From contig NC_135259.1 in assembly GCF_964204865.1 (NCBI RefSeq), forward strand, positions 20,212,001-20,276,000: a DNA stretch of 64,000 nt. The letters run 5' to 3'. Source of the DNA: Styela clava. Lineage: Eukaryota. The position numbers and the translations under genes are program-made. The notes beneath the pieces are model-generated. The model saw nothing but the letters and a program-made list of their open reading frames with translations. It was not told where the DNA came from and did no database searches. The first letter of the stretch is position 1, and every line of letters starts with the position of its first letter. Below are positions 5,362 through 61,317 of the stretch, piece by piece.

Positions 5362-6039
5362 CGCGGGCCGCACACAATTCAAATTTGGCACTTCTCCGCG
5401 GGCCGCACACAATTCAAATTTGGCACTTCTCCGCGGGCCGCACACAATTCAAATTTGGCACTTCTCCGCGGGCCGCACACAATTCAAATTTGGCACTTCT
5501 CCGCGGGCCGCACACAATTCAAATTTGGCACTTCTCCGCGGGCCGCACACAATTCAAATTTGGCACTTCTTCGCGGGCCGCACACAATTCAAATTTGGCA
5601 CTTCTCCGCGGGCCGCACACAATTCAAATTTGGCACTTCTCCGCGGGCCGCACACAATTCAAATTTGGCACTTCTTCGCGGGCCGCACACAATTCAAATT
5701 TGGCACTTCTCCGCGGGCCGCACACAATTCAAATTTGGCACTTCTCCGCGGGCCGCACACAATTCAAATTTGGCACTTCTCCGCGGGCCGCACACAATTC
5801 AAATTTGGCACTTCTCCGCGGGCCGCACACAATTCAAATTTGGCACTTCTTCGCGGGCCGCACACAATTCAAATTTGGCACTTCTCCGCGGGCCGCACAC
5901 AATTCAAATTTGGCACTTCTCCGCGGGCCGCACACAATTCAAATTTGGCACTTCTTCGCGGGCCGCACACAATTCAAATTTGGCACTTCTCCGCGGGCCG
6001 CACACAATTCAAATTTGGCACTTCTCCACGGGCCGCACA
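5362..6039. repeat. 35-bp minisatellite, ~19 near-perfect copies (CGCGGGCCGCACACAATTCAAATTTGGCACTTCTC), inside a degraded hAT-like element
   Basis: Direct head-to-tail repeats with no spacers. The left flank 5290-5370 resembles 38296-38375. Confidence 0.97.
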
Positions 6040-6456
6040 ATTTTCCTCATTCCATTTACTCATGGCGGTGACAATTCAGCGATCGAAACGCAATATTTGC
6101 TGCTGCCTTATCGCTTCATGAATCTCATAGTGCTTTCACATTGCTATAATGGACCAACGGTAAATGAATCTTGCTTCAAACTATATTTATTAACCGGTAT
6201 TTGTAACTGAGTTTAACGAATATTATTTATAGTGCTAGCGCGTCATTGTTTCCGTCTATTGTACAATTATTGCAATGCAATGAAAAACGATCCGAATACT
6301 CGTTTACTTACTGTTATTGGACACAAAATGGACCTATGGATCGTTTTTGTCGTTGTTATTGTAGTTGTTGTTGTTGTTTGGGGGAAAATTCCTGTGAACT
6401 CTATGAGATTTGTTTTCATAATAAAGCTTTGTGTGATGACGTTGGGCTAAAAGTAG

Positions 6457-42243: not shown

Positions 42244-42299
42244 CTAATATAACAAACAAGTTATTGGTATAATAAAAGTGAAATACATTGAACTCAAAG

Positions 42300-42326
42300 A
42301 TGTGGAAGTTATCGGCCCTCGTGGCG
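42300..42326 (+). CDS. exon 1: start of signal peptide MWKLSALVA
   Basis: aaagATG start and GTAAGT donor. Phase 0 joins exon 2 to give the signal MWKLSALVAMLCLATTVHG. Confidence 0.8.
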
Positions 42327-45300
42327 GTAAGTTTTTTATTTATATATTGCAATTTTATCGACTTTACTTAAATTTTGTTCAAAACCTTTAATAAAATCAA
42401 TGAAGCGAGACTAGCCAGAACATAAGCCAGAATTGGTGATGCTGCCACGTCACCCTTCTTTGATTATTTGGCTCGAAAGCCTTCAATTCAATAAAACACA
42501 TTTATCTAGTAAAAACTATGGAATATGCTAACGCTATGTTGTTATGCGCATATATATAAGTATTTCAGTTTTTAAAATCCCAAGTTCTTTATTAAAAAGA
42601 GATCAATGATCAAATATAAGGACACGAAGACCAAAAAGAGTAGTATGAGTATATAATCATTCACTAATAGTATTGAGCAGTGGTTCCCAAACCGCGGCTC
42701 GCGGGCCAATTACGGCTCGCGTAACGATGTAATATGGCCCGCGAACTTAGTGAAATAGTTTAACACTCTGTGTTTTCATCGTTTTGCGTTCTATGTACAG
42801 CCAGTTGTTACGGCATTATCACAGTTTAAACACATGTTTTATCGCAACAATTCATTGATACCGGTATCTTAATTATGCGTACCGATACCGGTATCGGCAC
42901 CTTGCAGGCGCTCCTCTCTCCTGGTACGCGAATAACATTCCGCTTTTAATATTGACTCCGATCAATCAACTTTGGAAACCAAGAGTAACGGTTATTAACT
43001 GAATATAATTTTGGCCCATCGCGCTAACAAACTTAGCAATCCCATTTATTTGAATTCACATTTCTTACATAAATATTTACAGATGTTATGTCTAGCGACT
43101 ACCGTGCATGGACATTTGCAGATGACCTTTCCCCCGGCCAGGAAGTTTGCATTGGACTTCCTGGATAACGTCAGAACTCCGGCACCGTGCAGTGGAATGA
43201 CATTTACAGGTATATATCAGTAGAAGATGGTATCGAACCATAACAACACCAGGCGGCAATTGATACGCCGTCGCTCCGAAGAAGGCCCTAAATAGTTACT
43301 AGTAAAAATATAGATATGGAAAAAGAATATTTATTTGTTTTCGGATCTTTTTTACAAATCCCGCCATTTAGGCAAAAATTTGAGATTTGAGAAAAACACT
43401 CCCGCCATGCTTTGGATTAAGGAATTAGTAATTATCAAGTTGAAAATATGGATGGATTAGGAAATATTTGAAAATTTGAATTTCCATCATATTCTGTATT
43501 TCTGACCCCAACTGGATAATAAGTAATTTTCCTATTTTAAGAGGGGAGAGGGGGATTTTAGGGATAATGACACCTTAACTCAGAGCTAGCCGCTGTGCCA
43601 GCAGTCACTTATGCACTCCAAGACATTATTTTCGTCACAATTTTAACTTTCAAGGCAATCTGATCACCAGTTTCCTTTCGTCTAAGAGTCTTGTTCCTGA
43701 ACAAAGTGGCAAGAACAAATTCATATTCACAAAATTATTTCTAACTTCTATTTGTTTAAATTTCTACAGATGGAATGCCGATTACGACACTGGAAACAGG
43801 AAAAACAGTCAGAGCTACATGGCACGTCGCTTATCCACATATGGTAAACAGACTTTTATTCTTTCATTCCTAGTGTTTCAACCTTCAAACTCTTATATGC
43901 CCTTTGATAAACATTAGAAAAAAACTTTCCATTTTCATTTCTTTGGTTTGCAATCAGTGTTAAAACGGTCGGACCTTTAGTGTGTCTGGTTGCCTAGTCG
44001 TCAAAGTTTGAATTCACATCTTTTCTTTCGATTACGCTGGAAACAATTGACCAAACCATGTAGAATGCCTATTTCAGTCCGCTGTGAGTGAAATATTAAA
44101 ATATATTTGTCTATACCAGGGGGGCACAACTGAAATGACGATACGCGAAGTTTTTAAAATAATCTTGTCACTTGCCACGTTCGAATAATTGCAAAATTGT
44201 AAACGAACTTCCATAAAATACACAATAACTGACAACAGCAGCACGAGCTACCAATGTGCGAATAAACATGACAATTTAAATTTTTTTTCGGTATAAACGT
44301 CAGTTATTAAGATTATAAATACTGGAGTTACTTTTAACCAAACCGTTCGTACTCCACGTTCGAGAATACGGAGTGTGTTGTGCACCCCAAGGCTAGACGG
44401 TCTCTCACAGCTAGAGCATAATACCCATTAAGTGTGCAAGGAGTGTGCTTCCTTCAATCTTCTATGTAGTCAATGGCCACTTTGATCATGCACGATCTCG
44501 CTTGCAAAATTTAACCCCAATGCCTTGAGGTCATGGAAGCGAGATGTTCTCACAGTAATCTTTATCACAATTTCATATTGACATGGGTAGACGTGGCAAA
44601 GCGAATGAGGAATCATTTCAAATGTTAAGACATATGCTCTTTTAAAATAATATTCAAATATACAATATTCTTGGCAGAAAAGCTCTTGGATCACTCAGAA
44701 AAGCCATATTCAATCTTCCGCATTTTAATTTAATGTATGTATAATCATATTTTTAGGGCGGAATCAGATTTGAGCTTCTGAATGCTACATCCGGCGAAGT
44801 TACGGCAAGCTTGACTGGTGACGGATATCAATACACCAATGATTCAACGTAAGTTAAATTATTAATTTAAACTTTCATTTACAATTGTTTAATAATGGGA
44901 GCTCAAACGAGCGCGGACTTCCGGGTAGCAACAGTGACCTAAAGGTCCAATGTCAAAGATCACCAAATTTGCCACCAGGCATGCGGAAATGACATTTCAT
45001 GTCTAAGAATTATTTCCATAGGAGTATGATTTAGAACAGTGTTTCCCAACCTATGGGTCGGCACACAAATCTCCATCTTTTTTTTACGTGGCCCATTTTC
45101 GTTGCACAAAAATTCTTCTGGCCCATCAACCTATTTTGGGGAAAAACTACAAGCAAAAAAAATTCTACGCAAAAATGGAATTTTCCACTTTATTGGTTGA
45201 AATTAATATTCCCACTCTGTTGCAGAAAACAGCATTTTTATTCATTGCTACTACAAAATTGATTATAATAACACAAATAAAACTAGCAATTTTCAATGAG

Positions 45301-48300
45301 ACTGTGGCCAGGCTAAATGAGTTTCCATGGCCCCGCAGTGAACAATGGCCTACTTGTTGAGAACTTGCGGACTAGAGATTTATTAACATACATTCAAAAT
45401 ATCCTATACCGTATATGCTCGTTTTACCTCCCGGTCTTGATCAAGGGCCCGTTTGAATAGCCGCCCGTGTGAACAGAACATAAAAGTAAATAAGGGCCGG
45501 TGCTGTTGAATTTTAAGCGCCGGTAGATAACACTCACGCTCTAGGCGTCCAATTACGTAACAGATAGCCTTGATTACGTAACACCGTGGTTCCAAACTGG
45601 GCGTCGCGTTTCAATATTGATAGGGCGTCGCAAAACTTTTCTTCTTTTGCGGACTTGTACCTGCGGTGCGTAGCAGAAGTCAAAATTTTCGGTATTCTCG
45701 TTAAATCATACTTGAGAACTGGAAATAACAATATATATATATTAATTATTGTAACGATCGAAAATAACAAGCGCCCGGGCTTGAATAAGGGCCCGGTTAG
45801 TGAGTTGGTTAAAAAAAATATGGGCCCGTGCTACCGAGCAAATACGGTATATACCAATACTATATCAAATAGAAATCCCTCATCGAGAACGAAAAAATTC
45901 CTCCATAAGAAGGGGTACTCCCCAAAGGATTGGGAAATATGGGGCTAGAGATTTCTTTACATGTACATTCAAATTATCATTTACCTTTTCTTGCAGGAGA
46001 CTTTACCATGATCTCACGTTTGGGGCAGATCATGTTTGCGATCACTGTATCCTAAGAATAACTCGGCAAGCAGGTGAATGGACTGCTGGGGCAGATGGAT
46101 ATCTCTTTTGGAGCTGCGCTGATGTGAAAATAATGGCACCAGGTGAGGGGTTGATTTTCAAAGATTTTTTTCTCCCTAATCGGCTTAGGTATATATTGAT
46201 ATTCCTGTGTGAAGTTATTATACCCTAACCGCTCCACAGGTGAGTGAGTAGATGCCCAACGACTTTTTTTTTGGTCTTTTATGTACGGTATTTATCGTTG
46301 TTTTTGTTGAACGTGTTCATACTTTACGCTCTGAGCAAGTCTTCACATAAGCACTCATTGATACCCCTAAGAGGCTAACGCATAGGCCAGTGATTCTCAT
46401 CCTTTTTTCTATCGTGGCTCATTTTTACTGCGCAAAAATCCCGTGACCCATCAACTTTGCCATGTCACGGTAAAACTACAAGAAAAACAAATAATTTTTT
46501 CCGCAAAATAGACACTTTAAATTAAATAATTAGAACGAAAATTACCACTCTGCACCAATCAACATCAGCATCATTTATTGCAACTACAATCAAAATCTAA
46601 CTATAATGTCACAAATGAAACTAAATTTATCAATAACTTTTGCAATTTTTATTAGATTCTTGGCCCACCAAAACTGGTTCTGTGACCAAGCAGTGAGCCA
46701 TGGCCGCCTAGTTACGAACCGATGACTTGGGGCTAACGCTCTAGCCATTGCTAGGCCTCCAACCGCCTATTTGTATTTACACTCACCTTAATAATAAGAA
46801 GCGCTATCACACAATTATATTTCTTTTTTCTCGCTATGCAGGGATTGATTGCTACGACGGAAAATGCTTGAATGGAGGAACATGCAGCGACGGGACCTGC
46901 CAGTGCGTCAAAACCTACACAGGGGACAGGTACTGTGAAATCATTTTATAAAAATTTATCGACATAAAATGAATTTTGAGTCTTGAAATAGACAAACATC
47001 ATCAGGAAATGAAAACACGAACGTGTATACAGGGTGTACAAAAAATTTCGCTCGATTCTATCTATAGTGATGAGAGTTAAAAAAAAATTCATTTTTTTAT
47101 TTATATTTTTCATTGTGCTTGTAATTCTCATTTATCATACAATAAAATTTATTGAAACTTACGATTGTTATTACTATAAATTTGGGCCAAAATATTTTTC
47201 TTACACCCTGTATATATATATATATATAGTAAGGAGAATTAACACGTATATGTAATCAAAAACATGATTGTTTGATATAGTATAGTTTCAACTTGATAGA
47301 GGCCTATTTATTCAATCAGAAAATCACATACAGACGGCATATGGAATTTCATTTTGTTCATGAATAAATAGCTCTGCTTTTTGTAAAGCAATTAAGTAAA
47401 TACAAGGATTGATGGCTTTAAACAGAGTTTCCAAACTCGGGAGTTACCAACGTGAGTGAGGCTCCCACGTTGAAATGTAGAATAGCATTTCTTGTATCAT
47501 ACATATTAATTTTTGGTAGCTTTAAATGCTTTTTAGACCCTAAATGCCCTTTAAAATCCACGTTTCCGGTCTCCGACCGGATCCGCTGGCTGTTACCGTT
47601 TAACCAGGTAATTAGAAATTTCATAACCACTCGTTGAAAATTCTTGGCCATGCCACTAAACCCAATCGAGTTCACCTCCCGAACGAAAAATCGCGAGCAA
47701 TAACTTTTCCCGGTAGCAGTACTAGTATAAGATAATTGATGCATCGGGTGCCAATTCCACACACAAAAAAAAAACTGGTAACAACCGCTTTACTCTCATA
47801 CAGATGTGAGTACAAAAACGACTGTGACGATGATACAGATTGCAATAGTAACGGAGTTTGCTACGATATCCAATCCACGTATTATCCGACCAAAGTCTGC
47901 TATTGTAACGCCGGCAAAATGGGAAGATACTGCAGCAAAGGTAAGGCGTGTTCTTGTCTATAGGCGTAGCCAGGATGCCGTCTCATGAACCCCCGGACAC
48001 CTCTCCCCCCTTAACCCGCTCAAAAAACATGGATTCGGCCTAAATCCAAGTCTAAATAAGAATCTTGGGAATAAATTTAAATGATAGAACCATGTTAGCT
48101 TGAAAATATTGTTTAAAATATGCTAGTCACACTTTATATACTACGATGATTTACGCCCTTCGTTGATAAGGCTCTGCGCAAATGTAAAAATAAAAATCTT
48201 CATCATGCATAGCAATTTTTCGTAGCTTCAAACGCATTTTCGACCGTGAAGACTTTTGAAACCCCACTTTTTTTGACCGTACCCACTTGCCGTTACGATA

Positions 48301-51300
48301 TAACTTGGCGATCAGAAATTTCAGAAACCTCTCCTGATTAAATTTATTTGCTACGCCCTTGTGACGCAATAACATGATAACACCTAAAATATGATAAATT
48401 CTACTGAATATGTTTAATAGTAAAATAGCAGTTCAACAAAATAATATTTTCTCAATTTTTGTGGGCCCATGTAAGATAAGATTATTAACTATAAAACAAA
48501 ATTTGCTGGTCAGCCGAGAGGGATTATCGCATATTGTTATGTAACAACGCGATGAGATTACACGGATTGAACGTCATAAAACATGTAAAGGATTGTAAGC
48601 AAAGCAGTAACCATGGTTACATTAACCGTGGGATAATTTAGTCATGAATACTTATCCAAATATAACGAATTGTAATATATGACAATATTCACACCAAGAA
48701 TGACTTAGCGTATTTCAGTCATTATTTTTATGCCAAGTGTTAATCGATAAGTGTCCAAAGGGCGTCGCGATGTCTAAGCCCAGGGTTTTTCAAAATTTTG
48801 ATGTTTTGGAGCCCGTGAAGAGATTGACTATATTGACTATATTGACCGAAAGGTCAACCTGAGGAAAGTTTTGCTGCTTTGCATGCTATGGACTGCCATA
48901 TTATTGATAAAGTAGTGTCGAAATATAATACAAAATGGCATTATCTATAGTGCAGTGTGCAAGCATCAGAAATTGGTGGTGGGGTAATAACGGATAGTAC
49001 CGATATATTAAAGTTGCAATCGAACTCAAATTTAAATAGGAATTATCCATGACGTCACAAATTTATGAGCATTTTATTATAAGTGGTATCAATCTCTTTT
49101 GTCCACATACAATGATGTTTAAGTACCTCTTGAGCGCGCATATTTGTTGTACCAGAGGTATGCGCAGATGTTTTTTGTTGTTATTGATGACCGTTAGTAG
49201 TGACCAATACGTCATAATAGCCTGTGAAGGATGGGTACTTCTCATTGTATCGAATTTTTTGTTAATATAATAGTCCAGTGCTTACCAACCGTTTTCTACA
49301 CATCACAAGTCGTTAACCTTTAGCATTGAAAAAGCCATTTGGTGTCCTTCCTATCAAACTTACATTTACACTCTTGTCAATGGCTAATAATACTCTAGAA
49401 AAACCACTTTTTTAATGCAAAAATTATGAATGAAAACAGTCTATTTACAACAGCTAGTCCAACAGCTAGGGGTTCCCAAGTTTTATCCAGGACGACCCCA
49501 AGGACAACTTTCAAGTGTCAAGTGCGACCCCATGTCAATATATATATATTTCATGAAACTTTAGAGCTTCTTTTACTGTACTTTTGAGTTTGGTCATGTG
49601 GTGGTATTAAGTAAAATAAGCTAAAACCAAACAGTGATGTCACAATAAGCACCTACATTTTCTATAGCATAAGCATAGAGCGATGCTTACGGGCCTGTTT
49701 TACAGTAAGCCATGCTACAAACTGCTAAATTTAACATGGTTTGTCAAATCTTAGATGATTTGTGTATCCATCCTCTACCATACCTCAGCGACCCCATGAC
49801 CTGTTTGCGACCCTACCTACTTATCACTCCGACCCAATTTGGGGTCGCGACCCTTGGTTTGGGAACCCCTGAGCTAGACTATCGTGTGGTATGTGTTGTG
49901 TATGATCTTTGCTACAAGCAAATTTACTAAATTTACAACATTTGTTTTTAAATTTTCAGATTCTCCTGTAACGAACGCAGTGAAAACAGCTGAAGAGTTG
50001 ACGGGATATTACAAATCCGAGTTGTATGGAAATCCAGAGTTCAGGTCAGCTGACGCTGTCTTCAAATGTTAATTTAATTGCCCTAACTAAGATCGGGCTT
50101 TCTTATGCGACGTTTTTACGCATCATCTCCAAACAAAATTTTAAACAAAATATTTAGGACATACCCAGATGCGGGTCGCAACTTTTTCATTTGAAAAGAC
50201 GGGAAAAAATGTTTTCCTTTATCACACCTAACAATTTTTCGTATCTTTAAACGCTTTTTAGACCGTCAAAATCCTTGAAAATACACGGCGAGAATCTTAG
50301 TGGAAATTTAAGACAGAGTGGACTTGGAAATAGTTCTGCTAGCTTGTTGTTATTGTAAGAATAAAACTGACATTTATCAATTTCTACTGGATCGAGTGCT
50401 TTCACATTTTCAGCACTAAAATATTTTTTTTCCCATTTTCCGGTATTAGGAACCCTAATTTTAAACAAGTTGCGCCATCTCGCGGATTTTCTGCTAAACT
50501 AATTTTGACGAGTTGTTTGATCAATAAACGACTCATATTTATATGACAACAAAACTTTTGTTATCATCCTCTTAGCACACCCTCAGCCTTGCCCAGAGTG
50601 ATAATTCAAATTAATTATAGCATTTGGATTTAGCTCAGATTTCCGAGATTCAATTTGGCAAGTGCTTTGAAAACAACACCAAAAATCTCACAAAAACGTG
50701 CAAAAACCGTAAAAACTTTTTAAAGTGTTGAATCTATCATTTCTAAATAAAATTTACAGGGGAAACTGTTGCTTATATTTTTGACATTTTTTTTCTAGTT
50801 TATCTACTTTCTGTGTTTACTAAAAGACCCCAAAGGAACCCCTAATTATGATTCTACTAAATGGATTGAGTCATCTCGCGATTTTAAGCCAAACCAATTT
50901 TAACGAGCTTGTATTCATATAAAAAAAAGTACCTTAATTTCCATTCTCCTATGACACCAACAGCGTTATCCAGTGGTTACCACAACACTTAGGGTGTATA
51001 TATGAATAGAATACGCAATGACAAACCGTCAAGATTTCTGTTCTTTCGAATTGTATCTCCTTACATTTTGTCTGGGACGTTGCCAGGCGTTGGAATAGGA
51101 ATCCCCATCTCGTTTCGTTACTTTAAAAATGCATTTTTCTGTATCACACGTAGAAATTTTTCGTAGATTGAAACGATTTTTAGACCATAATGACCCTCTA
51201 TAAACCCAAGTTCATCCAATTCGAACTAGCAAGCTGTTACGGTTTTATATGGAAATTAGAAATTGCAGCCCTTGCTTACGAAGCTAGTAATGTTTTATCG

Positions 51301-54300: not shown

Positions 54301-57300
54301 CGAACCACCAACATAATTCATGGAATTTACCTCTTGTATTATAATTAACCATTGATTCCGATAAACATGGGTTTCGAGAGTCTTGATCAGGGGTGGGAAA
54401 CATACGACCCGCGGGCCAGACCCGACGAGATTTTGACCGGCCCGCTGACTGTACATCAGTACATTAGGATATTACATTATTACACTTTTAGTACGTTACG
54501 ATAAATTCATTATGTGTTTTTGGTTCCTAATTTTTTTATAGTTTAAACTTTACTTTAAACGCGATTCATAATTTTCTCTCTTTCATTAGCGACTAAATAT
54601 GTGATTAAGATATTGAATACTATTCATATTATAATCCGGCCCGCCGAGAACTTTATTTTCCCACATCTGGCCCGTTTACTAGAGAAGTTGCCCCCCTGGT
54701 CTAAAGGGTCTAAAAAACGTTTTCAAGCTACAAAAAATTGCTATGTATAGTACGGAAGGTGTCCTTTTTACATTTCTAAATTGATGCTCCAACCCTCCCC
54801 GTGATTACGCTCATGATTGCGTACAAAGAATTACTTCAACTCGAAATTTACATTTAAACCTGAGATCATATATATGTATATTTGTGTGTGTATATTGTTA
54901 AAATATAATCGAATGCCTATTAGACTTGTCACTATTAAAAAACTTGCAAAACTTTAAAAATCATTTATTTTGCCAGAATTAGGTTTGCTTTTATATATTT
55001 ATAGTTTTTTATACAATTCAAACAATCAAATTATTCCGCATGCAATGTTTCATTAGGATTTCGCAACACCAAAAAGGTTGAAAACGACTGTCAAATGCTT
55101 TATGCTGGTACGCGCTATTAATTGATATTCAATTTCTTGGTAGATAACCTGTGATTAAACTATTAGAAGGCGGCATTTATTCTGACCCTAATTACATAGG
55201 GTCACATGCCTCTCAAGAACTTCATATTCATCATCTTAAATTTGCACCCCAGCTCCAGTGCCGGAACCAGAAGGTACTCCAGAAGGCACCCCCGCACCCG
55301 AAGGAGAAGGAGAGCCCGCTCCTGGAACCACTGCCGCACCAGAAGGTGCTCCCGAGGGCACACCGGAAGGTAACCCGGAAGGAACCCCGGAAGGAGCCCC
55401 GGAAGGTCAACCAGAGGGAAATTCTGCTGCTTTGCATGCTATGGACTGCCAGGATATGGTCTTTCGTGAGTTAAATTTTTAATTTGAACTTGTAATTTTA
55501 CTAGTTGCTGCCTACTAGTAAACTTTAACCTCTTTGTTGCTTGTGTGTTTTGTTTATGGTAAACCTTTTTCCTTATCGTGCTTACTTGAACTGTCCCATG
55601 TCTTCAGTTTATATTTGATAGGACGTTGTTGAATATCGGATTGAGAGACGCCATGACGGGTTCTTTGTACCAAGGTTGCCCGTGTTGGTACTCGTGGCTG
55701 AGTTTGGTTCGCATTTGAAATGTGTGTCATATGAACTGTTTCCCAGACCGTGCCGACTTGAACTGCCCTATATATGGTTCCAATCTATATTTGATGAGAC
55801 CTTGTTCGAAAACATAGCAGTGTCTCCTTGATTGATCTCTGAATGAAATTATTCTCTGAAAGACCGTGAGATACTTAGCTTATAACGGTGAATAAAGGTA
55901 TTAGTAAAAACGAAATGGCGCTAGACTTGAAGCAGTTAAAGTTGTTGCGCAATATTTAAACACTTTTATACTCTACTAACACATTCACTCTCAAACTTTG
56001 TGATTATCTCAAGGACTCTGAAATATTTTTGGCATTTGGGTTTTTATGGTGGAAATTACGCGAGACTAGTTCTCAATCCTTCCTCTATGCCTTTATGCTA
56101 GTGGATCCGTACTACGTTGCAACACAGCAAAATAGACTAAAAACTCATATATTTTTAACCATGTGAGCGTCTCTTTAAACGTAAATTGTTGGATTAGAAT
56201 TTTATGTTTCGTGAGAATACATCTATCCCCTTCAAAAGTCTATCAAGTGTTTATGCTAGTGAATCCATATGATTGTTCATTTTTTGTCATAATTGTAAAC
56301 TACTTGTCTAAGGAAGTCTGATTTTTGTCAGACGAAACGTTACAGAAAGACATTTGTGTAAGCGTGCAGCAGGACTCTTTGAATTGCATTCTACAGTTCT
56401 GGTCTTTTCCCGCCGGTTTTACTGTCAGAGGGAAATAAAGACGTCTGGACCACTACTGCTCTAATGGTTACTAAATTAAATTTTTCAGTTTCGGCTGAAG
56501 GTAACCGACATCGCATTCTTGACTCCTATACCAGAGACAGGTCAACTCCTAGACCCGACTCGTTCTTTGGCGGAACGGATGATTTGACTGCTGCAGCGGC
56601 CTCGCACGTTGATGGAATGTTGCATGCAGCCTTTAGAAGGTAAATTTGTTATTTTCATTCTTTTTATACGTGAATTTTCTCTTCTGAAGGTCCACCTGTG
56701 ATTGGTCGGATCGTATGTAAAAGCGTGGTAGAAGCGCAATAAGCTGAAAACATGACGTCATGAATTATGACGTAATAATCCAAAGTCGTATTAATAGAAT
56801 TGTAACGTCATTAAATTATTTGAAAAAAAAGGAAACGAAAGATTGGCAGTGCGACACATCCGCCTGTGATTTTGTCAAATTGTGTGTAAAAGCGTAGGAT
56901 AAGAGAAATAAGGTGAAAACATGACGGCATAAATGATGACGTCACATTCAATAAAGACGTAATAATGAATTGCAACGTCATTAAATTGTTTGAAGGAAAA
57001 GGGAATAAAAGAAGGCAGTTTGAAATACAATCTCTCAACACTTTCTTTACCTAACATGCTCTTTGCTTTTGTAGGAAGCTTTACAGCTCAGACCAGGCCG
57101 ATCACACCATTCCGGACGGACCAGCAACCTTCATTTGGGCAAGAGGACAAGACCCGAATAGATTCTACCACTGGCCAATCGGTGGACTTGAAAGATGCCA
57201 AGCGTCCAACTATGATTATTACAAGTAAGTATGGATGGAAGATGTGCGAGATAGACTAGCTGGTAAAGCAGGTATGGGCGAGGCCAGAGGCGAAACCAGA

Positions 57301-60300
57301 GGCCGAAAGGGCCACAAAGCATTTGGAGGGGGCCCTAACGCTAGGCGAAAACTAATTTTACTTTTAACTTTACAGGGAAACTCCCAGTTCTTCCTAATTC
57401 CATAGCTTGATGTTTTCTCTCTGCTAAGCATGAATTCTTTGAACATAACAGGATTTGGAATCTAACCCTAGTAACACTGTAAATCCCGCTGGAATGATAA
57501 ACAGGGCACCGTGAGTGCTATAACCCTCCGAAATGGGGCAACGAGTCATAAAATGTTAAGAACCGCAGGTCTCTATAAAAATCTGTCTCGAAAATTCTTT
57601 TCATGAAAATGCTAACTAGAAAATTCTGAAACAAGTACAAATAAAGCACAAACAAATAAAATACAAAGGACCCAATTACAAGTCTTTTAAAGTTAATTTT
57701 GTCTGGGTAGAATATCCCATTAAGGAACATTTCAATGAATATTTAAATTATGACCATATTTTTGACAACTTGGTTGGGATTCGAACCCATGTCTTTCTCG
57801 GACTTAATAATCCAAAATAGTCATCTTTGCTTTACTTGATATCTAGGATCAACGAACTGAAATACCACGGCACCAAAGACTCCCAGAGAGGATCCAGAAC
57901 CATCAATGTTTACGGTAAGTTATACTTTATACATATATTGTGAGATTTATCAAAGTAAGGTTCTGAGCGTTCAACTCGGCGATCTGAGGTCTTTCCTGGC
58001 TTGCTATAAATAATCCTCCCATCAAATAAAGCAACCGATTTAGGTAAAAATGCGCGCTTGTATATCCCAGATACAGTGAAGTAAGTTTGTAAGAAGATCG
58101 TTATGTGACGGTGGCTGCTTTTATCTAGCCTTGTTTGAAGCAAAAGGCACGAGTAGGCGTCCTATTACGTCATTACACCAACGAAAATTTTCCGTTTCCC
58201 CATTTCGGGCTGACTACGTTGTTGGTGCTAGGCCTAAACTATGTGCCTAAATTTAAAATTCAAAACCAATCGGCAAGATTATTAAAAGATAAATAGGTTA
58301 TAACCGATAAGTGATGTGCAAAGAGCAGTACGTAAATAGACTGGATCTACGCAAGGTCCCCGCCGATCCATCGACTCAAAAGTAGAAAGAAAACTCATAA
58401 TAAAGCGTATGGTAGCAATTTTTCTCACAGCATAGTCCCGATGTCCCTAGGCCCCATGTAATTCAATTTGCATAGGGCCCCATAACAGCTAAGGCCGACT
58501 CTGATCATTATTCAAGGTATCACGGTTATCAAATATTTACTTGTATTCCAACTTCAAAATTTTACCTATGTCATCATTGCAATTACTAAATCTTTTTTTT
58601 CTATTTCTATCCCGTAACAGATGATCCTAACTCTACCGAAGAAGCAAGTGAAGGCTCTCACTCTTCCCCAAAAGATTGCACAGAAAATTGCAATTATGTC
58701 GCACGTTGGAGATACAGAAAGAGCACAGGAATGGTGCAATTCACTATAACAGCAAAGGTGGCCCTGCAACAGTGGGCAGCTATTGGATTTTCTGACGACC
58801 AGAACATGGTAAGTATTGCTGAGCAATGTAAATATAAAGTTTGCTTGTGTTACCTATGCTGTAGTTGCCATGGTTACTGTACTTTCGGTGTTTGGAGTCG
58901 ATTACTTCTAGTTGATACTTTAAATATCCGGTCGATTAAATCCGGTCCCTTCAACGCATTAGTACTTTGCAACAATTGGCGGCTAATGGTTTTCTGACGA
59001 CTAAAACGTGTTGAGTACCGCCGAGACATGGGAAAATGAAGCTCTCTTGTATTCTTTATTCTACAGTTGCCAGAAGTGTGTGTACTAACATAGAGGTACC
59101 TAATTTGGTTCGCCTACTTAACATCAAGTTGTGTAAAGAGACGGAAACCTATGGGCACTTGGCTAACACAGGCCGTCCCCGAACTCGTAATAGAACTAAA
59201 ATAAGGAAAATCAGAATAAAATTATGGCCTAACCCTAACCTGGTACACACACAACGGGAGTACCAAATTTTCTACATACAAAAGGCCAAAACTTAAAAAT
59301 GATATTTCCTCTTCCATATTAATTTAATGTAGTGCTTAGAATCATGAATTTTCATACCGTTGTTTTTACAATAATTCTCCCAAAGTGGAAAAGTTCATGC
59401 AATAAACTCGGTACTGTACTGATTAAGCTAAGTATTTGATTTTTAAATTTTTATTCAGGTCAACACGGACGCTGTCGTAGTATGGATGGATAACGCGTCG
59501 AACCCGCCAACAGTAACCGATAGATATATTACCGCCAGGACTCCAGCAGGTGTCGCCCTTGACGGGGGAACCCCCACTACATCCGTTGTTGGGGGAAGCT
59601 ACAATAATGGTCAAATGACGGTAGAATTCACTAGACCTCTAAAATCTACGGTAAGTTGATTCACTGTACAAAAAAAGTGTGCTTCACATCCCACCGGCAC
59701 GTCGGAGGGATTTTTTGTTTTGGGTGTTTGTACTTTTTTGTATCACATATTCCGGAGGGTCCGCAGACACATCCCGTGCGGCCCGCAAAACAAAATTAGC
59801 TTACACTAGATATTGGCAGATATTTTTATTTATTGGCAAAACATTTTTTAGCTAGTCAAACTGGGTTTGCGATCTCGAGATTTAAACCCTTTTCCTAATC
59901 CCGATGTCGGAAATGATATTTAGTACAATCACAGAATCTCTAGGTTGTATCTATAAACGTCAAGGCGGTGGAAATGGCGTCCTGTGATCGGTTCCCAATA
60001 AAAAAAATATAATCGTCTTTTTATAATACAGTAGTCTTGAATAACCTATTGACATATTTTATCAACATTTTTTTCATTGCAGAATTGCAATATATATTTT
60101 CATACCTATTTTCAATTCCTTGCGATTTTTTTTATGTATTAACAATTTTTTGTACGACAAGAAAACCTCATATTTCAATCATTAACACATTTTCTCATAA
60201 TCAAACCGTATAGTACAAAATATTGACTCCATGCACATCTTTTTTTTATTTTCAGGACGATAATGATCTTGGGCTGGACACTTGTAGGTTTTTTCTGTAC

Positions 60301-61317
60301 GCATGGGGAGGTAACGTGAACGGCAATGACCTGACTTATCACTCATCTAGGGAGACCAGCACTCAGAAGATTTGCATCGGTAAGACTATATTTTAAAGTA
60401 AAACGACGCGTTGGCCGTGTGGTAAAATTGTTACAGTTGACTGTGGTAACCTCACAACTGAAACTTTTAAAGGAAGCCAACTCTGATGGCCATATGGCCG
60501 TTTTCCTTTCCTCCCAGTCTATACCAAAAACTTGGCTTATGTTGTTGTATATTTTTATTATCATTGCAATGCTCGTTTTTTCTGGTTGGCGAAATAATTA
60601 ATCTACCCATAATAGCGCCCATGGCATAATTTAAAATTTGCCCCTTTGATCGTTGACTGAAACATTTTTACCGACTGTTGTTAAATTAAGATGCTTGTAC
60701 GTTATTAGTTAGGTAAAAATACGAGTTTCAATTATTTTCAATTTGGAATTATTTTATTGAAACTGATAGATCTTACGAAAAAAAAATTTTCGCCCTATTA
60801 CCTTGCACCGCTTTTCAAACGGCGCCCATGGCCATGGTTGCCATACCCTGGTCTAGATACTCAACTGGGTATCAAAGACTTGATATCATTGCATCACAAC
60901 TTGAAATCTCTGTTCAAACCCTGAGCTTCACCTCAGGGTGTAATAAAGTGGGTAAGCAATGTCGTACCGGAAATGTTCTTGTCATCCCAGATAACATTAC
61001 ATCCGCACTTACATACGAGAATTTCACTTCCAATTAAAAATGGAACATCTTGCCCTGTCATCTCCGATTATCTATCGTGGGTTCGCAGGTTCGAATCTAA
61101 TGGGGGGCGAATATAAGCGAGAGGATTGCTAGACTCCTCAGTCGCCGTAACGTAACCGCGTGACCGGGTCGGTTACGTAAGACAACTCTTGGGCAGATTT
61201 TATTATTGTTATTCTTCATTTACAGATTCTGGCTCGGCAAGGATCGCTATCTCAAACATACTAAGCTGGTCTTGGATTGTTTGTGTGCTTATCATTTCTC
61301 GTCTATCACTTCAATGA
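42300..61317 (+). CDS. 20-exon gene, 778 aa: signal peptide + His1 LPMO-like (His-brace) domain + 2 EGF + 2 DOMON (Met/His haem type) + GPI-like tail; nahoda-like family
   Basis: Manually spliced: join(42300-42326,43083-43209,43770-43843,44757-44848,45997-46142,46842-46929,47804-47940,49960-50044,51819-51936,52621-52753,53557-53600,53939-54026,55253-55465,56489-56639,57075-57224,57847-57914,58621-58808,59459-59650,60256-60379,61226-61317). Total 2337 nt, all introns GT-AG, phases match, no internal stop. Motifs HLQMTFPPARKFALDFLDN, WHVAYPHMGG, FWSCAD, DSYTRDRSTP and ELKYHG match my recollection of Drosophila nahoda-like proteins (not database-checked). Confidence 0.9.
43083..43209 (+). CDS. 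exon 2: MLCLATTVHG|HLQMTFPPARKFALDFLDNVRTPAPCSGMTFT (mature His1)
   Basis: tttacag acceptor, G|gtatat donor; His directly after the predicted V-H-G signal cleavage. Confidence 0.9.
43770..43843 (+). CDS. exon 3: DGMPITTLETGKTVRATWHVAYPHM (second brace His)
   Basis: tttctacag acceptor, gtaaac donor, phase 1 to 0. Confidence 0.88.
44757..44848 (+). CDS. exon 4: GGIRFELLNATSGEVTASLTGDGYQYTNDST
   Basis: tttttag acceptor, gtaagt donor, phase 0 to 2. Confidence 0.88.
45409..45847. mobile_element. Tc1/mariner-type MITE (TA TSD)
   Basis: ta|CCGTATATGCTCG...CGAGCAAATACGG|ta. A similar CCGT-ended element lies at ~30234-30406. Confidence 0.75.
45997..46142 (+). CDS. exon 5: RLYHDLTFGADHVCDHCILRITRQAGEWTAGADGYLFWSCADVKIMAP (end of LPMO-like domain)
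   Basis: ttcttgcag acceptor, gtgagg donor; CxxCxL ... FxxCADV motif. Confidence 0.9.
46842..46929 (+). CDS. exon 6: EGF-like 1 (CYDGKCLNGGTCSDGTCQCVKTYTGDR-C)
   Basis: Canonical EGF Cys spacing; tatgcag / gtactg splice sites. Confidence 0.92.
47030..47210. mobile_element. Tc1/mariner-type MITE (CAGGGTGT TIR, TA TSD) followed by (TA)n
   Basis: ta|CAGGGTGT...ACACCCTG|ta. Confidence 0.75.
47804..47940 (+). CDS. exon 7: EGF-like 2 (CEYKNDCDDDTDCNSNGVCYDIQSTYYPTKVCYCNAGKMGRYCSK)
   Basis: EGF Cys pattern; catacag / gtaagg splice sites. Confidence 0.92.
48846..48898 (+). pseudogene. 53-bp diverged copy of the 3' part of exon 13 inside intron 7
   Basis: ccgaaaggtcaacctgaggaaagttttgctgctttgcatgctatggactgcca vs exon 13 ccggaaggtcaaccagagggaaattctgctgctttgcatgctatggactgcca. 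Confidence 0.8.
49960..50044 (+). CDS. exon 8: linker DSPVTNAVKTAEELTGYYKSELYGNPEF
   Basis: ttttcag / gtcagc; phase 1 to 2 fits both neighbours. Confidence 0.85.
51819..51936 (+). CDS. exon 9: DOMON-1 N-terminal strands (MYWKLLGTNKDEIEVVLQVKTKTWVALGWRPNTVTGTCR)
   Basis: DOMON hallmark xYW ... WVAxG; tatcag / gtaagg splice sites. Confidence 0.92.
52621..52753 (+). CDS. exon 10: Pro/Glu/Thr-rich insert (SFPVTSGTPTGTPEGSPEGTAEPETTPEPASEPETTPEPTTAAA)
   Basis: ttttttcag / gtacgg; phase 0 to 1. Confidence 0.88.
53035..53280 (+). mobile_element. degraded tRNA-derived SINE
   Basis: A-box-like TGGCGCATCGTG and B-box-like GTTTCGAAT; body GCGAGAGGATTGCTGGACT shared with ~51990-52267 (- strand) and 61075-61180. 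Confidence 0.6.
53347..53456. mobile_element. Merlin-like short palindromic MITE subtype B (~105 bp)
   Basis: GAAGTATGCGCACCAAGATG...CATCTTGGTGCGCATACTTC; TSD cacagggg/cacagggt. Other copies at ~22970-23067, 36757-36866, 40152-40260, 40441-40549 and 61990-62100. Confidence 0.85.
53557..53600 (+). CDS. exon 11: 44-nt polybasic exon ARKRRSLRRVKRETE (two furin-type sites)
   Basis: atacag / gtaagt; phase 1 to 0. Confidence 0.8.
53939..54026 (+). CDS. exon 12: VNMIKQLCLAGNVSEAIAWANSNYNSDPG
   Basis: ctatag / gtatat; phase 0 to 1, needed to restore frame between exons 11 and 13. Confidence 0.75.
55253..55465 (+). CDS. exon 13: (xPEG)n repeats then LHAMDCQDMVF (DOMON-1 resumes, haem Met)
   Basis: ccccag / gtgagt; phase 1 to 1. 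Confidence 0.9.
56489..56639 (+). CDS. exon 14: DOMON-1 core LSAEGNRHRILDSYTRDRSTPRPDSFFGGTDDLTAAAASHVDGMLHAAFRR
   Basis: tttttcag / gtaaat; DOMON D-x-Y and FxR motifs. Confidence 0.93.
57075..57224 (+). CDS. exon 15: KLYSSDQADHTIPDGPATFIWARGQDPNRFYHWPIGGLERCQASNYDYY
   Basis: ttttgtag / gtaagt; DOMON IWAxG motif. Confidence 0.92.
57847..57914 (+). CDS. exon 16: INELKYHGTKDSQRGSRTINVY (DOMON-1 haem His)
   Basis: atctag / gtaagt; YHG ... RG terminal DOMON motif. Confidence 0.9.
58621..58808 (+). CDS. exon 17: DOMON-2 start (...CTENCNYVARWRYRKSTGMVQFTITAKVALQQWAAIGFSDDQNM)
   Basis: taacag / gtaagt; WxAIGFSxxxxM DOMON motif. Confidence 0.93.
58948..59025 (+). pseudogene. degraded duplicate of the exon 17 3' end and donor site in intron 17
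   Basis: tgcaacaattggcggctaatggttttctgacgactaaaacgtgttgagtaccgccgag vs tgcaacagtgggcagctattggattttctgacgaccagaacatggtaagtattgctgag. Confidence 0.75.
59459..59650 (+). CDS. exon 18: DOMON-2 core VNTDAVVVWMDNASNPPTVTDRYITARTP...GQMTVEFTRPLKST
   Basis: ttattcag / gtaagt; 64 codons, phase 0 to 0. Confidence 0.92.
60256..60379 (+). CDS. exon 19: DDNDLGLDTCRFFLYAWGGNVNGNDLTYHSSRETSTQKICI (DOMON-2 haem His)
   Basis: ttttcag / gtaaga; YAxG ... YH motif. Confidence 0.92.
61226..61317 (+). CDS. exon 20: DSGSARIAISNILSWSWIVCVLIISRLSLQ* (GPI-signal-like tail)
   Basis: tttacag acceptor, phase 1; small residues SGSA then a hydrophobic stretch; TGA at 61315-61317. Confidence 0.8.

What the first reader, a model, noticed from the sequence alone, without database searches (positions are those of the whole stretch)
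42300..61317. Animal cell-surface protein fusing a His-brace (LPMO-like) copper domain to two haem-type DOMON domains: a possible self-contained LPMO + cytochrome system
Seen: after a 19-aa signal (cleavage V-H-G|H) the mature protein starts with His. A second His lies at mature position 56 in WHVAYPHMGG, and the domain ends CxxCxL...FWSCADV. Two EGFs follow, then two DOMON domains that each keep a Met and a C-terminal Y-H, then a GPI-like tail. Established: His1 + H-x-G + aromatic-xx-C-A-D is the layout of LPMO-fold histidine-brace copper proteins (AA10/AA11/AA15, X325/Bim1). Met/His DOMONs bind b-type haem, as in the cytochrome domain of cellobiose dehydrogenase, the natural electron donor of fungal LPMOs. 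Inference: one polypeptide carries both the copper site and a haem relay, so it could oxidatively remodel extracellular polysaccharide (chitin, or cellulose if the host is a tunicate). Alternatively it could reduce or capture copper like Bim1. As far as I recall, nahoda-like proteins are annotated only as EGF/DOMON proteins.
Basis: partly seen in the sequence, partly recalled or inferred. Interest (0 to 1): 0.92.

Follow-up and report, generated by a model that had tools for sequence, protein, structure and literature searches.

The report
Animal copper His-brace plus DOMON protein
This sea-squirt gene encodes a cell-surface protein that starts with a small copper-binding domain of the kind found in polysaccharide-cleaving LPMO enzymes, followed by two haem-type DOMON domains; the same layout is conserved in invertebrates from sponges to tunicates (the insect 'nahoda' family), and its function is untested.

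Summary
The stretch holds a 20-exon, 778-aa gene whose exon translations all match RefSeq 'uncharacterized protein LOC120343320 [Styela clava]'. Spliced RNA contigs from three studies confirm the first six junctions. After a 19-aa signal the protein starts with His. His75, the CxxC pair and FWSCADV follow, then two EGFs, two DOMONs with Met and Tyr-His, and a GPI-like tail.

The N-terminal domain has the LPMO fold. A family profile finds Thermobia AA15 as the best solved structure (E 7e-5), with the second His on catalytic His91. An AlphaFold model of the sponge member matches AA15 (Z 11.3), AA16, LaX325 and AA10/11/13/9, with His1 on residue 1. In 133 relatives His1 is kept in 132 and the second His in 129.

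This is the 'nahoda' family, found from sponges and placozoans to tunicates. It is mostly annotated only as EGF/DOMON. Pfam misses the copper domain in this protein.

Prior notice is thin: one paragraph in Voshol et al. 2019 and sporadic Pfam hits.

Copper binding, haem binding, electron relay and substrate are all inferred. A Bim1-like copper-handling role fits about as well as true LPMO catalysis. Earlier scan notes cover only this same stretch, not other DNA.

The parts
42300..42326 (+). Exon 1: start codon and first 9 residues of the signal peptide
   Evidence: Sequence. Joint 42326|43083 in spliced contigs of 3 runs. Exact match to P0207 residues 1-9.
43083..43209 (+). Exon 2: rest of the 19-aa signal (ends V-H-G), then His20 = mature His1 (43113-43115), the PPAR motif, the invariant DFLDN motif and Cys45
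   Evidence: His1 kept in 132/133 relatives, D34 100%, C45 100%.
43770..43843 (+). Exon 3: strand carrying His70 and His75 (43838-43840); His75 is the second His-brace residue
   Evidence: The family profile aligns this His with His91 of TdAA15A (PMC5823890). Kept in 129/133.
44757..44848 (+). Exon 4: GG after His75 and the middle strands of the copper domain, with one N-glycosylation sequon
45997..46142 (+). Exon 5: C-terminal strands of the copper domain: C121/C124, Glu134 (46076-46078), Phe144 (46106-46108), S-C147-A-D149
   Evidence: Weak Pfam LPMO_10 hit to profile positions 151-183/183. E134 99%, F144 95%, C147 100% conserved.
46842..46929 (+). Exon 6: EGF-like domain 1
   Evidence: Pfam EGF/EGF_TEN weak hits. 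Joints. P0207 residues 157-184.
47804..47940 (+). Exon 7: EGF-like domain 2
   Evidence: Pfam EGF_TEN spans residues 157-237 of P0207.
49960..51936 (+). Exons 8-9 (49960-50044, 51819-51936): linker and the N-terminal strands of DOMON-1
   Evidence: Pfam DOMON hit to profile positions 6-39. Exact match to P0207 232-298.
52621..55440 (+). Exons 10-13 (52621-52753, 53557-53600, 53939-54026, 55253-55465): roughly 150-aa acidic Pro/Glu/Thr-rich insert inside DOMON-1, with two dibasic furin-type sites in exon 11
   Evidence: P0207 residues 299-449. Similar dibasic pairs in Clavelina, Saccoglossus and P0067.
55441..57914 (+). End of exon 13 and exons 14-16 (56489-56639, 57075-57224, 57847-57914): body of DOMON-1 with Met450 (55441-55443) and Tyr564-His565 (57866-57868)
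   Evidence: Pfam DOMON. The Met, the neighbouring Cys and the Tyr-His are invariant in 37/37 aligned members.
58621..60379 (+). Exons 17-19 (58621-58808, 59459-59650, 60256-60379): DOMON-2 with Met643 (58806-58808) and Tyr735-His736 (60340-60342)
   Evidence: Pfam DOMON on residues 602-724 of P0207 (protein-level E 6.1e-43). Met kept in 25/30 and His in 22/32. The Met aligns with Leu in human DBH.
61226..61317 (+). Exon 20: small-residue stretch (D-S-G-S-A), short spacer, hydrophobic tail and stop; a GPI-attachment-type signal
   Evidence: Sequence. No GPI predictor was run, so this is inferred from the pattern.

Best explanation
The gene is the Styela clava member of the pan-invertebrate 'nahoda' family. 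It encodes a secreted, probably GPI-anchored cell-surface glycoprotein. Signal-peptide cleavage exposes His1 of a compact (about 136 aa) LPMO-fold domain. His1 and His56 (mature numbering; His20 and His75 of the precursor) form a histidine brace that binds one copper, with Phe144 at the axial position and an invariant Glu134 nearby. Two EGF modules hold this domain next to two DOMON domains that bind haem b through Met/His. I think it most likely works as a membrane-tethered copper redox enzyme. Electrons from an extracellular reductant or a membrane cytochrome pass through the DOMON haem(s) to the copper. The copper then activates O2 or H2O2 to modify an apical-matrix polysaccharide: chitin in most phyla, and chitin or tunic cellulose in tunicates. 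Shown here: the gene model, its expression, the fold, the residue conservation and the family range. Inferred: copper and haem binding, the relay, and the substrate.
For: Gene model and expression.

LPMO fold: a family profile finds TdAA15A as the best PDB hit (E 7.1e-5), with the second His on His91, which is a brace residue (PMC5823890). The AF2 model of sponge member P0022 has pLDDT 87.4. Its Foldseek hits are almost all LPMOs. In the wide VIA-align search the 17 matches with Z>=8 are all LPMO or LPMO-like: TdAA15A Z 11.3 with 135 residues aligned and 26% identity, AA16 10.3, LaX325 10.0, and AA10/11/13/9. In most of them model residue 22 (His1) is paired with chain residue 1.

Conservation in 133 members: His1 132/133, second His 129/133, Glu134 99%, Phe144 95%, four Cys 99-100%, and the -1 residue small in 132/133.

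Pfam: LPMO_10 or BIM1-like reach their cut-offs in some members. ESM Atlas neighbours carry LPMO_10 or BIM1-like (a lead only).

DOMONs: Pfam E 6e-43 on this protein. Met and Tyr-His of DOMON-1 are invariant in 37/37. CDH-cyt Pfam hits occur in 5 of 41 members, best 4.6e-10. Foldseek on the P0092 model hits the cytochrome domains of CDH and of pyranose dehydrogenase.

Met/His is the haem-b ligand pair of the CDH cytochrome and of CYBDOM DOMONs and is absent from DBH (PMC10691727). Here the Met aligns with Leu of DBH. Haem DOMON (AA8) domains are the known electron donors of fungal LPMOs (PMC4507011, title and abstract). The smallest active LPMO, JdLPMO10A (142 aa), is of similar size and is the top Foldseek hit of the P0092 model.
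Against: No metal, haem or activity data exist. I could not read model coordinates, so the His-His distance and the positions of Glu134, Phe144 and the DFLDN acids are not measured. The stretch between the two His residues is only 55 aa, so the loop region that forms most of the flat substrate-binding face in AA10/AA15 is largely missing. LaX325, which has no polysaccharide activity, matches nearly as well as AA15. BIM1-like Pfam hits cover the whole profile, whereas LPMO_10 hits cover only its C-terminal half. Pfam finds nothing in the N-domain of this very protein. The family also occurs in a placozoan and a crinoid; my recollection is that chitin is not established in those groups. Met/His of DOMON-2 are less conserved (83% and 69%). 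No electron source is fused.
Confidence: 0.4

Rival explanations
1. Copper handling rather than catalysis. The His-brace domain captures extracellular Cu(II) at the cell surface, as fungal Bim1/X325 does. The DOMON haems reduce it to Cu(I) for hand-off to a CTR1-type importer, so the protein would be a surface cupric reductase and chaperone of invertebrates.
For: There is a GPI-type tail, as in Bim1/X325 (PMC10952591). BIM1-like Pfam hits reach the cut-off and cover the whole profile in P0006 (27.7 bits) and P0092 (29.8 bits). LaX325 matches at Z 10.0 over 123 residues. The domain is short, with a reduced loop region. Acidic residues D34 and D37 next to the N-terminus are invariant. The family is present in taxa where chitin is not established as far as I recall. 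Haem DOMONs of CYBDOM proteins are candidate metal reductases (PMC10691727).
Against: The best sequence and structure match is a true LPMO, TdAA15A. Whether an Asp fills the fourth copper position, as in X325, could not be tested. Known Bim1/X325 proteins have no haem domain. No link to copper transporters is seen in the window.
Confidence: 0.3
2. A redox-silent matrix or adhesion protein. The LPMO-like domain and the DOMONs act as carbohydrate-binding or protein-binding modules of an apical extracellular-matrix glycoprotein, comparable to the GPI-anchored DOMON protein Knickkopf in insect cuticle, and the metals are structural or absent.
For: The DOMON superfamily includes sugar-binding members (PMC6950343; PMC10691727). 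Relatives carry mucin-like acidic repeats and SEA domains typical of surface glycoproteins. The closest PDB sequence match of DOMON-2 is the non-haem DOMON of DBH.
Against: Both brace histidines are kept in 97-99% of 133 members, and Met/Tyr-His of DOMON-1 are invariant from sponge to tunicate. That is hard to explain without cofactor binding. The Met is exactly the residue that DBH lacks.
Confidence: 0.15
3. The His-brace resemblance is superficial. The mature N-terminus is not His20, or the domain is a generic immunoglobulin-like beta-sandwich with no copper site.
For: No signal-peptide predictor was run. Pfam gives no N-domain hit for this protein itself. Fibronectin-III-like and Ig-like sandwiches appear at Z 6-7 in the fold search.
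Against: All matches with Z>=8 are LPMO or LPMO-like and start at His1. The profile hit to TdAA15A is significant and puts His on His91. His sits directly after a -3/-1 cleavage motif in 132/133 members.
Confidence: 0.05

Closest known systems
AA15 LPMOs of animals (Thermobia domestica TdAA15A, PDB 5MSZ)
   Same: Animal origin. N-terminal His after a signal peptide. The second His sits in a P-H-x-G context that aligns with His91. Both share a C-x-x-C pair before the last strands and an aromatic-x-x-C-A-D ending. This is the best sequence (E 7e-5) and structure (Z 11.3) match.
   Different: Only about 20-26% identity. About 136 aa against about 195, with 55 instead of 90 residues between the two His. 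Phe instead of Tyr184 at the presumed axial position. Tyr instead of Ala89 two residues before the second His. Four instead of ten cysteines. It is fused to EGF and DOMON domains and a GPI-type tail rather than to CBM14/GH18 or to nothing. Activity is unknown.
X325 / Bim1 LPMO-like copper proteins of fungi (LaX325, PDB 6IBH; Pfam PF20238)
   Same: Small LPMO-fold His-brace domain on a GPI-anchored surface protein. The Pfam BIM1-like profile is matched end to end in some members. Z 10.0.
   Different: Animal rather than fungal. Whether an Asp completes the copper plane is untested. It carries haem-type DOMON domains that X325 proteins lack. Most members, including this one, are below the Pfam cut-off.
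Cellobiose dehydrogenase cytochrome (AA8) with a fungal LPMO
   Same: A Met/His haem-b DOMON-fold domain is paired with a His-brace copper domain. Foldseek hits CDH and PDH cytochromes, and five relatives hit Pfam CDH-cyt.
   Different: Here both are in one polypeptide, with no flavin or PQQ dehydrogenase to feed the haem. The protein is membrane-tethered and belongs to animals. Electron transfer is not shown.
AIR12 and CYBDOM/SDR2 (FRRS1) DOMON cytochromes
   Same: Extracellular Met/His DOMON(s) at the plasma membrane. AIR12 is also GPI-anchored (my knowledge). The S-x-D-x-x-M motif of CYBDOM DOMONs (PMC10691727) recurs in DOMON-2. A plant DOMON+DUF568 cluster is an ESM Atlas neighbour (a lead only).
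   Different: No cytochrome b561 membrane domain is fused. A copper domain stands where SDR2 has a reeler domain.
Drosophila nahoda and 'DOMON-like domain-containing protein nahoda' of insects
   Same: Same family and domain order. Insect members found with a sandfly family member (P0088) carry this name and keep His1, the second His and the DOMON Met/His.
   Different: Insect members are longer (1000-1500 aa), with mucin-like repeats and in some a SEA domain. In the papers I could search, nahoda appears only in passing (one or two mentions each), in papers on other topics.

Membership tests
LPMO superfamily (His-brace, LPMO fold) | Immunoglobulin-like beta-sandwich of the LPMO type | tested here: met
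   AF2 model of family member P0022 (pLDDT 87.4). All VIA matches with Z>=8 are LPMO or LPMO-like, and the Foldseek top hits are LPMOs. This was tested on a sponge homologue (about 45-50% identical), not on the window's own protein.
LPMO superfamily (His-brace, LPMO fold) | His as residue 1 of the mature protein | tested here: inconclusive
   His20 follows a 19-aa hydrophobic signal with V at -3 and G at -1. His is kept in 132/133 members and -1 is small in 132/133. His1 of the model pairs with residue 1 of solved LPMOs. Cleavage itself was neither predicted with SignalP nor measured.
LPMO superfamily (His-brace, LPMO fold) | Second His completing the brace | tested here: met
   His75 aligns with His91 of TdAA15A in a significant profile hit (PMC5823890) and is kept in 129/133. 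Spatial adjacency was not measured because no coordinates were available.
LPMO superfamily (His-brace, LPMO fold) | Copper binding and oxidative cleavage of a polysaccharide | not testable with these tools
   Needs protein chemistry.
CAZy AA15 / Pfam LPMO_10 (PF03067) | Sequence membership: Pfam LPMO_10 above the gathering score | tested here: not met
   No LPMO_10 hit at E<=0.1 on P0207. Exon 5 alone gives 13.9 bits against a cut-off of 23. 11 of 41 relatives hit at E<=0.01, but only P0053 (27.8 bits) and P0208 (24.2 bits) were seen above 23, and always over the C-terminal half of the profile only.
CAZy AA15 / Pfam LPMO_10 (PF03067) | Axial Tyr (Tyr184) and Ala89 next to the brace, as in TdAA15A | tested here: not met
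   The aromatic of the aromatic-x-x-C-A-D ending is Phe144 (95% Phe). The residue two before the second His is Tyr, not Ala. The Phe-to-Tyr184 equivalence rests on the Pfam profile end and is inferred.
X325 / BIM1-like (PF20238) | Pfam BIM1-like_dom above the gathering score | tested here: not met
   Not found on P0207. Met by relatives P0006 (27.7 against 27) and P0092 (29.8) over the whole profile. 4 of 41 members hit at E<=0.01.
X325 / BIM1-like (PF20238) | Asp carboxylate in the fourth equatorial copper position | not testable with these tools
   Invariant Asp34, Asp37 and Asp149 are candidates.
X325 / BIM1-like (PF20238) | GPI anchor | tested here: inconclusive
   The C-terminus has small residues, a spacer and a hydrophobic tail of about 15 aa. 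No predictor or experiment was used.
Haem-b DOMON (CDH cytochrome / AA8, CYBDOM, AIR12 type) | DOMON fold | tested here: met
   Pfam DOMON E 6.1e-43 on P0207, two stretches. Foldseek hits DBH DOMON and the CDH and PDH cytochromes with the P0092 model.
Haem-b DOMON (CDH cytochrome / AA8, CYBDOM, AIR12 type) | Met and His axial ligands at the conserved positions | tested here: inconclusive
   Met450/His565 are invariant in 37/37. Met643 is kept in 25/30 and His736 in 22/32. The Met aligns with Leu in non-haem DBH. The Met-His spacings (115 and 93 residues) are close to the 98 of CDH (Met65/His163, from my memory). No residue-level alignment to a haem DOMON was obtained.
Haem-b DOMON (CDH cytochrome / AA8, CYBDOM, AIR12 type) | Bound haem b with a cytochrome spectrum | not testable with these tools
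   Needs purified protein.

The most novel reading that the evidence does not exclude
An ancient animal enzyme class. The nahoda family would be a self-sufficient, membrane-anchored LPMO whose own DOMON cytochromes deliver electrons to the copper site. It would be used from sponges to tunicates to oxidatively remodel chitin or cellulose in apical matrices (tunic, cuticle, eggshell). That would make it the first natural LPMO-cytochrome fusion and a missing redox partner for animal LPMO chemistry.
Probability: 0.25. Interest if true: 0.9.

Novelty: new variant of a known kind. Interest (0 to 1): 0.7.

Why it matters
Histidine-brace proteins are known in animals only as stand-alone or CBM/GH18-linked AA15 enzymes. 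Haem DOMON domains are known as the electron donors of fungal LPMOs, but there they sit on separate proteins. Here both are in one conserved surface protein found across invertebrate phyla, including Drosophila (nahoda), Ciona and filarial nematodes. In the papers I could search it is mentioned only in passing.

If the copper domain is catalytic, this shows how animals power LPMO chemistry at the cell surface, and it bears on how tunic, cuticle and eggshell are built. If it handles copper, it is a candidate for the unidentified surface cupric reductase of invertebrates.

Either outcome can be tested directly with existing genetic models. The nematode and arthropod members would then be of applied interest. 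Credit for first notice is shared: Voshol et al. 2019 and Pfam already hint at the domain.

Tried and rejected
1. Pfam on the window's single exons gave only sub-threshold hints for the N-domain (LPMO_10 13.9 bits on exon 5). Pfam on the full database protein P0207 gave no N-domain hit at all.

2. phmmer of the single sponge N-domain against PDB sequences was not significant (TdAA15A E 1.6). Only the family profile was significant.

3. The search for homologous proteins with the N-domain region of P0006 found just two proteins. The word index limits its reach, and an alignment query was needed.

4. Complex prediction of the P0092 copper domain (residues 19-148) with its DOMON (240-405) and haem returned 'no answer' (score 0.00). 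This is neither support nor evidence against binding.

5. Exon-wise scans of the species' genome with PF03067 and PF20238 found nothing. They are uninformative for intron-split genes.

6. Model coordinates are not exposed, so I could not measure the His-His distance or place Glu134, Phe144 or the DFLDN acids.

7. tRNA and Rfam scans of the window found nothing.

Exons were searched by reference, and the full-length work used the database protein P0207, which a search returned and which the exon translations match exactly.

9. Rejected: that the gene is a pseudogene or an assembly artefact. The frame is intact, all splice sites are GT/AG, and it is expressed.

10. Rejected: that the Closterium algal hits are family members with a brace. 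They lack His1 and the second His.


Full report
**What is in the sequence**

The + strand between 42300 and 61317 carries one gene of 20 exons. I placed the first five exons by reading the DNA. I placed the rest by local tblastn with homologues plus GT/AG and phase bookkeeping.

Spliced contigs from runs of three separate studies show GT..AG joints at 42326|43083, 43209|43770, 43843|44757, 44848|45997, 46142|46842 and 46929|47804. They continue after 47940 into the exon at 49960. The gene is therefore transcribed and spliced as modelled.

A late search returned P0207, RefSeq 'uncharacterized protein LOC120343320 [Styela clava]', 778 aa. Every exon translation is an exact substring of it, in order. 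The exon lengths sum to 2337 bases, which is 778 codons plus a stop.

Exons were searched by reference, and P0207 served as the full-length form. The window lies on contig 13 of a 377-Mb assembly, and the copper domain is single-copy there.

**Check of the observation**

The signal is 19 residues, split between exons 1 and 2, and ends V-H-G. The next residue is His20 (43113-43115). Mature position 56 is His75 (43838-43840). The domain ends with C121-x-x-C124, Glu134, and Phe144-W-S-C147-A-D149.

Two EGF exons follow. DOMON-1 is interrupted by an acidic insert of roughly 150 aa that holds two dibasic sites. It keeps Met450 and Tyr564-His565. DOMON-2 keeps Met643 and Tyr735-His736. The last exon encodes small residues, a spacer and a hydrophobic tail.

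**What the N-terminal domain is**

- A 48-aa exon query against 1.8 billion representative proteins found 66 relatives. They include full-length proteins from a tunicate, a hemichordate, a scallop, a hairworm and a sponge.
- On these, Pfam gives BIM1-like_dom at 27.7 bits (cut-off 27) and LPMO_10 at 27.8 bits (cut-off 23).
- A profile of seven members finds TdAA15A as the best PDB sequence (E 7.1e-5). It aligns the family's P-H-x-G-G with P90-H91-I-G of the enzyme. His1 and His91 are that enzyme's copper ligands (PMC5823890).
- An AlphaFold2 model of the sponge member P0022, built on 46 sequences, has pLDDT 87.4.
- Foldseek returns almost only LPMOs for this model.
- The Foldseek-independent search of 48,161 chains puts TdAA15A first: Z 11.3, rmsd 3.1 Å, 135 residues aligned, 26% identity. 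Next come an AA16, LaX325 (Z 10.0), and AA10, AA11, AA13 and AA9 enzymes. All 17 matches with Z>=8 are LPMO or LPMO-like. In most of them the alignment starts at model residue 22, the His, paired with residue 1 of the chain.
- In 133 family members with a complete domain, His1 is kept in 132, the second His in 129, Glu134 in 99%, Phe144 in 95% and the four cysteines in 99-100%. The residue before His is G/A/S/C/T in 132 of the 133. His lies 16-35 residues from the annotated start in most members.
- The other His of the motif (His70) varies: it is Arg in nematodes. His75 is therefore the likely ligand.

I conclude with about 0.9 confidence that this is a genuine LPMO-fold histidine-brace domain. 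It is not a regular AA15 or X325 member. Pfam sees nothing in this protein's own N-domain. Identity to TdAA15A is near 20-26%. Only 55 residues separate the two His, against 90 in TdAA15A. The residues matching Ala89 and Tyr184 are Tyr and Phe. An invariant D-F-L-D-N motif has no counterpart that I know of.

**The DOMON domains**

Pfam DOMON is strong on this protein (E 6.1e-43). The closest solved sequence is the DOMON of human DBH. In that alignment the family's Met sits opposite a Leu of DBH.

Published work states that Met/His ligate haem b in the CDH cytochrome, that the pair is universally conserved in CYBDOM DOMONs within an S-x-D-x-x-M motif, and that it is absent from DBH and from sugar-binding DOMONs (PMC10691727).

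In the family, Met, the adjacent Cys and Tyr-His of DOMON-1 are invariant (37/37). In DOMON-2, Met is kept in 25/30 and His in 22/32. This protein has both pairs, and DOMON-2 shows the S-x-D-x-x-M pattern.

Five of 41 members hit Pfam CDH-cyt, best 4.6e-10. The whole-protein model of the compact member P0092 (pLDDT 86.5, pTM 0.82) hits the cytochrome domains of pyranose dehydrogenase and CDH as well as DBH. I rate haem binding at about 0.7, and it is inferred.

**Family and annotation**

A search with a sandfly member returned insect proteins named 'DOMON-like domain-containing protein nahoda', 'Nahoda protein' and 'nahoda'. It also returned members from chelicerates, crustaceans, springtails, a priapulid, molluscs, an annelid, Trichoplax and Styela. 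Earlier searches added nematodes (Brugia, Loa), a crinoid, Saccoglossus, Ciona and a sponge. No vertebrate appeared, though the searches were not exhaustive.

Names and precomputed Pfam tags are almost all 'uncharacterized', EGF or DOMON. Of 41 members scanned, 11 hit LPMO_10 and 4 hit BIM1-like at E<=0.01.

The only paper I found that links these domains is Voshol et al. 2019. [quoted passage not shown] The papers that mention nahoda do so only once or twice each and are on other topics. Searches for LPMO with DOMON, histidine brace with DOMON, and LPMO with ascidian gave nothing else relevant.

**How it most likely works**

Shown: a transcribed gene for a secreted multidomain protein with an LPMO-fold domain at the very N-terminus and two DOMONs.

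Inferred from the families:
- One copper is held by the amino group and side chain of His1 and by the second brace His (mature His56, precursor His75).
- One haem b is held per DOMON.
- A GPI anchor is attached.
- Electrons flow from haem to copper, as between the CDH cytochrome and fungal LPMOs.

The output is open. For catalysis on a polysaccharide: the nearest relative is an active LPMO. There is a near-invariant Glu, and Phe at the axial site as in chitin-active AA10s. The size is comparable with the active 142-aa JdLPMO10A. Haem DOMONs are the classic LPMO donors.

For copper handling: the substrate-face loop region is cut down, the domain resembles X325/Bim1 equally well and shares its GPI-type tail, it has invariant acidic residues, and it occurs in taxa where chitin is not established as far as I recall.

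My odds are about 0.4 for the redox-enzyme reading, 0.3 for copper capture and reduction, 0.15 for a redox-silent matrix role and 0.05 for no brace at all.

**Limits**

No coordinates were available, so adjacency of the two His residues is inferred from homology. The complex prediction gave no answer. SignalP and GPI predictors were not available.

**Verdict**

The structural interpretation is supported. The functional claim is open. This is a new variant of a known kind, with thin prior notice, and I score interest at 0.7.

Noticed in passing
window 45400-45960 (intron 4 of the gene): A dispersed repeat of about 450 bp. The genome scan gave 565 first-look candidates, with copies of 80-91% identity on many contigs. 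RNA-type contigs cover it at a depth of about 2000, far above the flanking exons. It is probably a non-autonomous transposable element.
   Followed up: partly
window 5362-6039: A minisatellite of a 35-bp unit, 19.4 copies, 98% matches. It explains the three overlapping long ORFs listed at 5385-6210.
   Followed up: partly
window 48846-48899 (intron 7): A degenerate in-frame copy (72% identity over 18 aa) of the 3' end of exon 13, the part that encodes the DOMON-1 Met motif. It looks like a leftover of an exon duplication. It is not in the RefSeq protein; the laid stretch (42250-48100) did not reach it, so the RNA contigs say nothing about it.
   Followed up: no
window 53557-53600 (exon 11) and homologues P0006, P0039, P0067: Two dibasic furin-type sites sit 5-20 residues apart inside the acidic insert of DOMON-1 and recur in Clavelina, Saccoglossus and another tunicate. 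Invariant cysteines flank the insert (P0006 C302 and C439). The protein may therefore be cut into two chains that stay joined through the DOMON-1 sandwich.
   Followed up: partly
P0106-P0108 (Closterium, charophyte algae): Very long algal proteins (1583-2186 aa) match the family's copper-domain C-terminal motif and the DOMONs, but they lack His1 and the second His. They may be brace-less relatives outside animals.
   Followed up: no
P0092 (434 aa, ENA; organism unknown): A minimal family member: copper domain, two EGFs, a single uninterrupted DOMON and a GPI-like tail. AlphaFold gives pTM 0.82 for the whole chain, which suggests a fixed arrangement of the domains. It would be a convenient construct for biochemistry.
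   Followed up: partly
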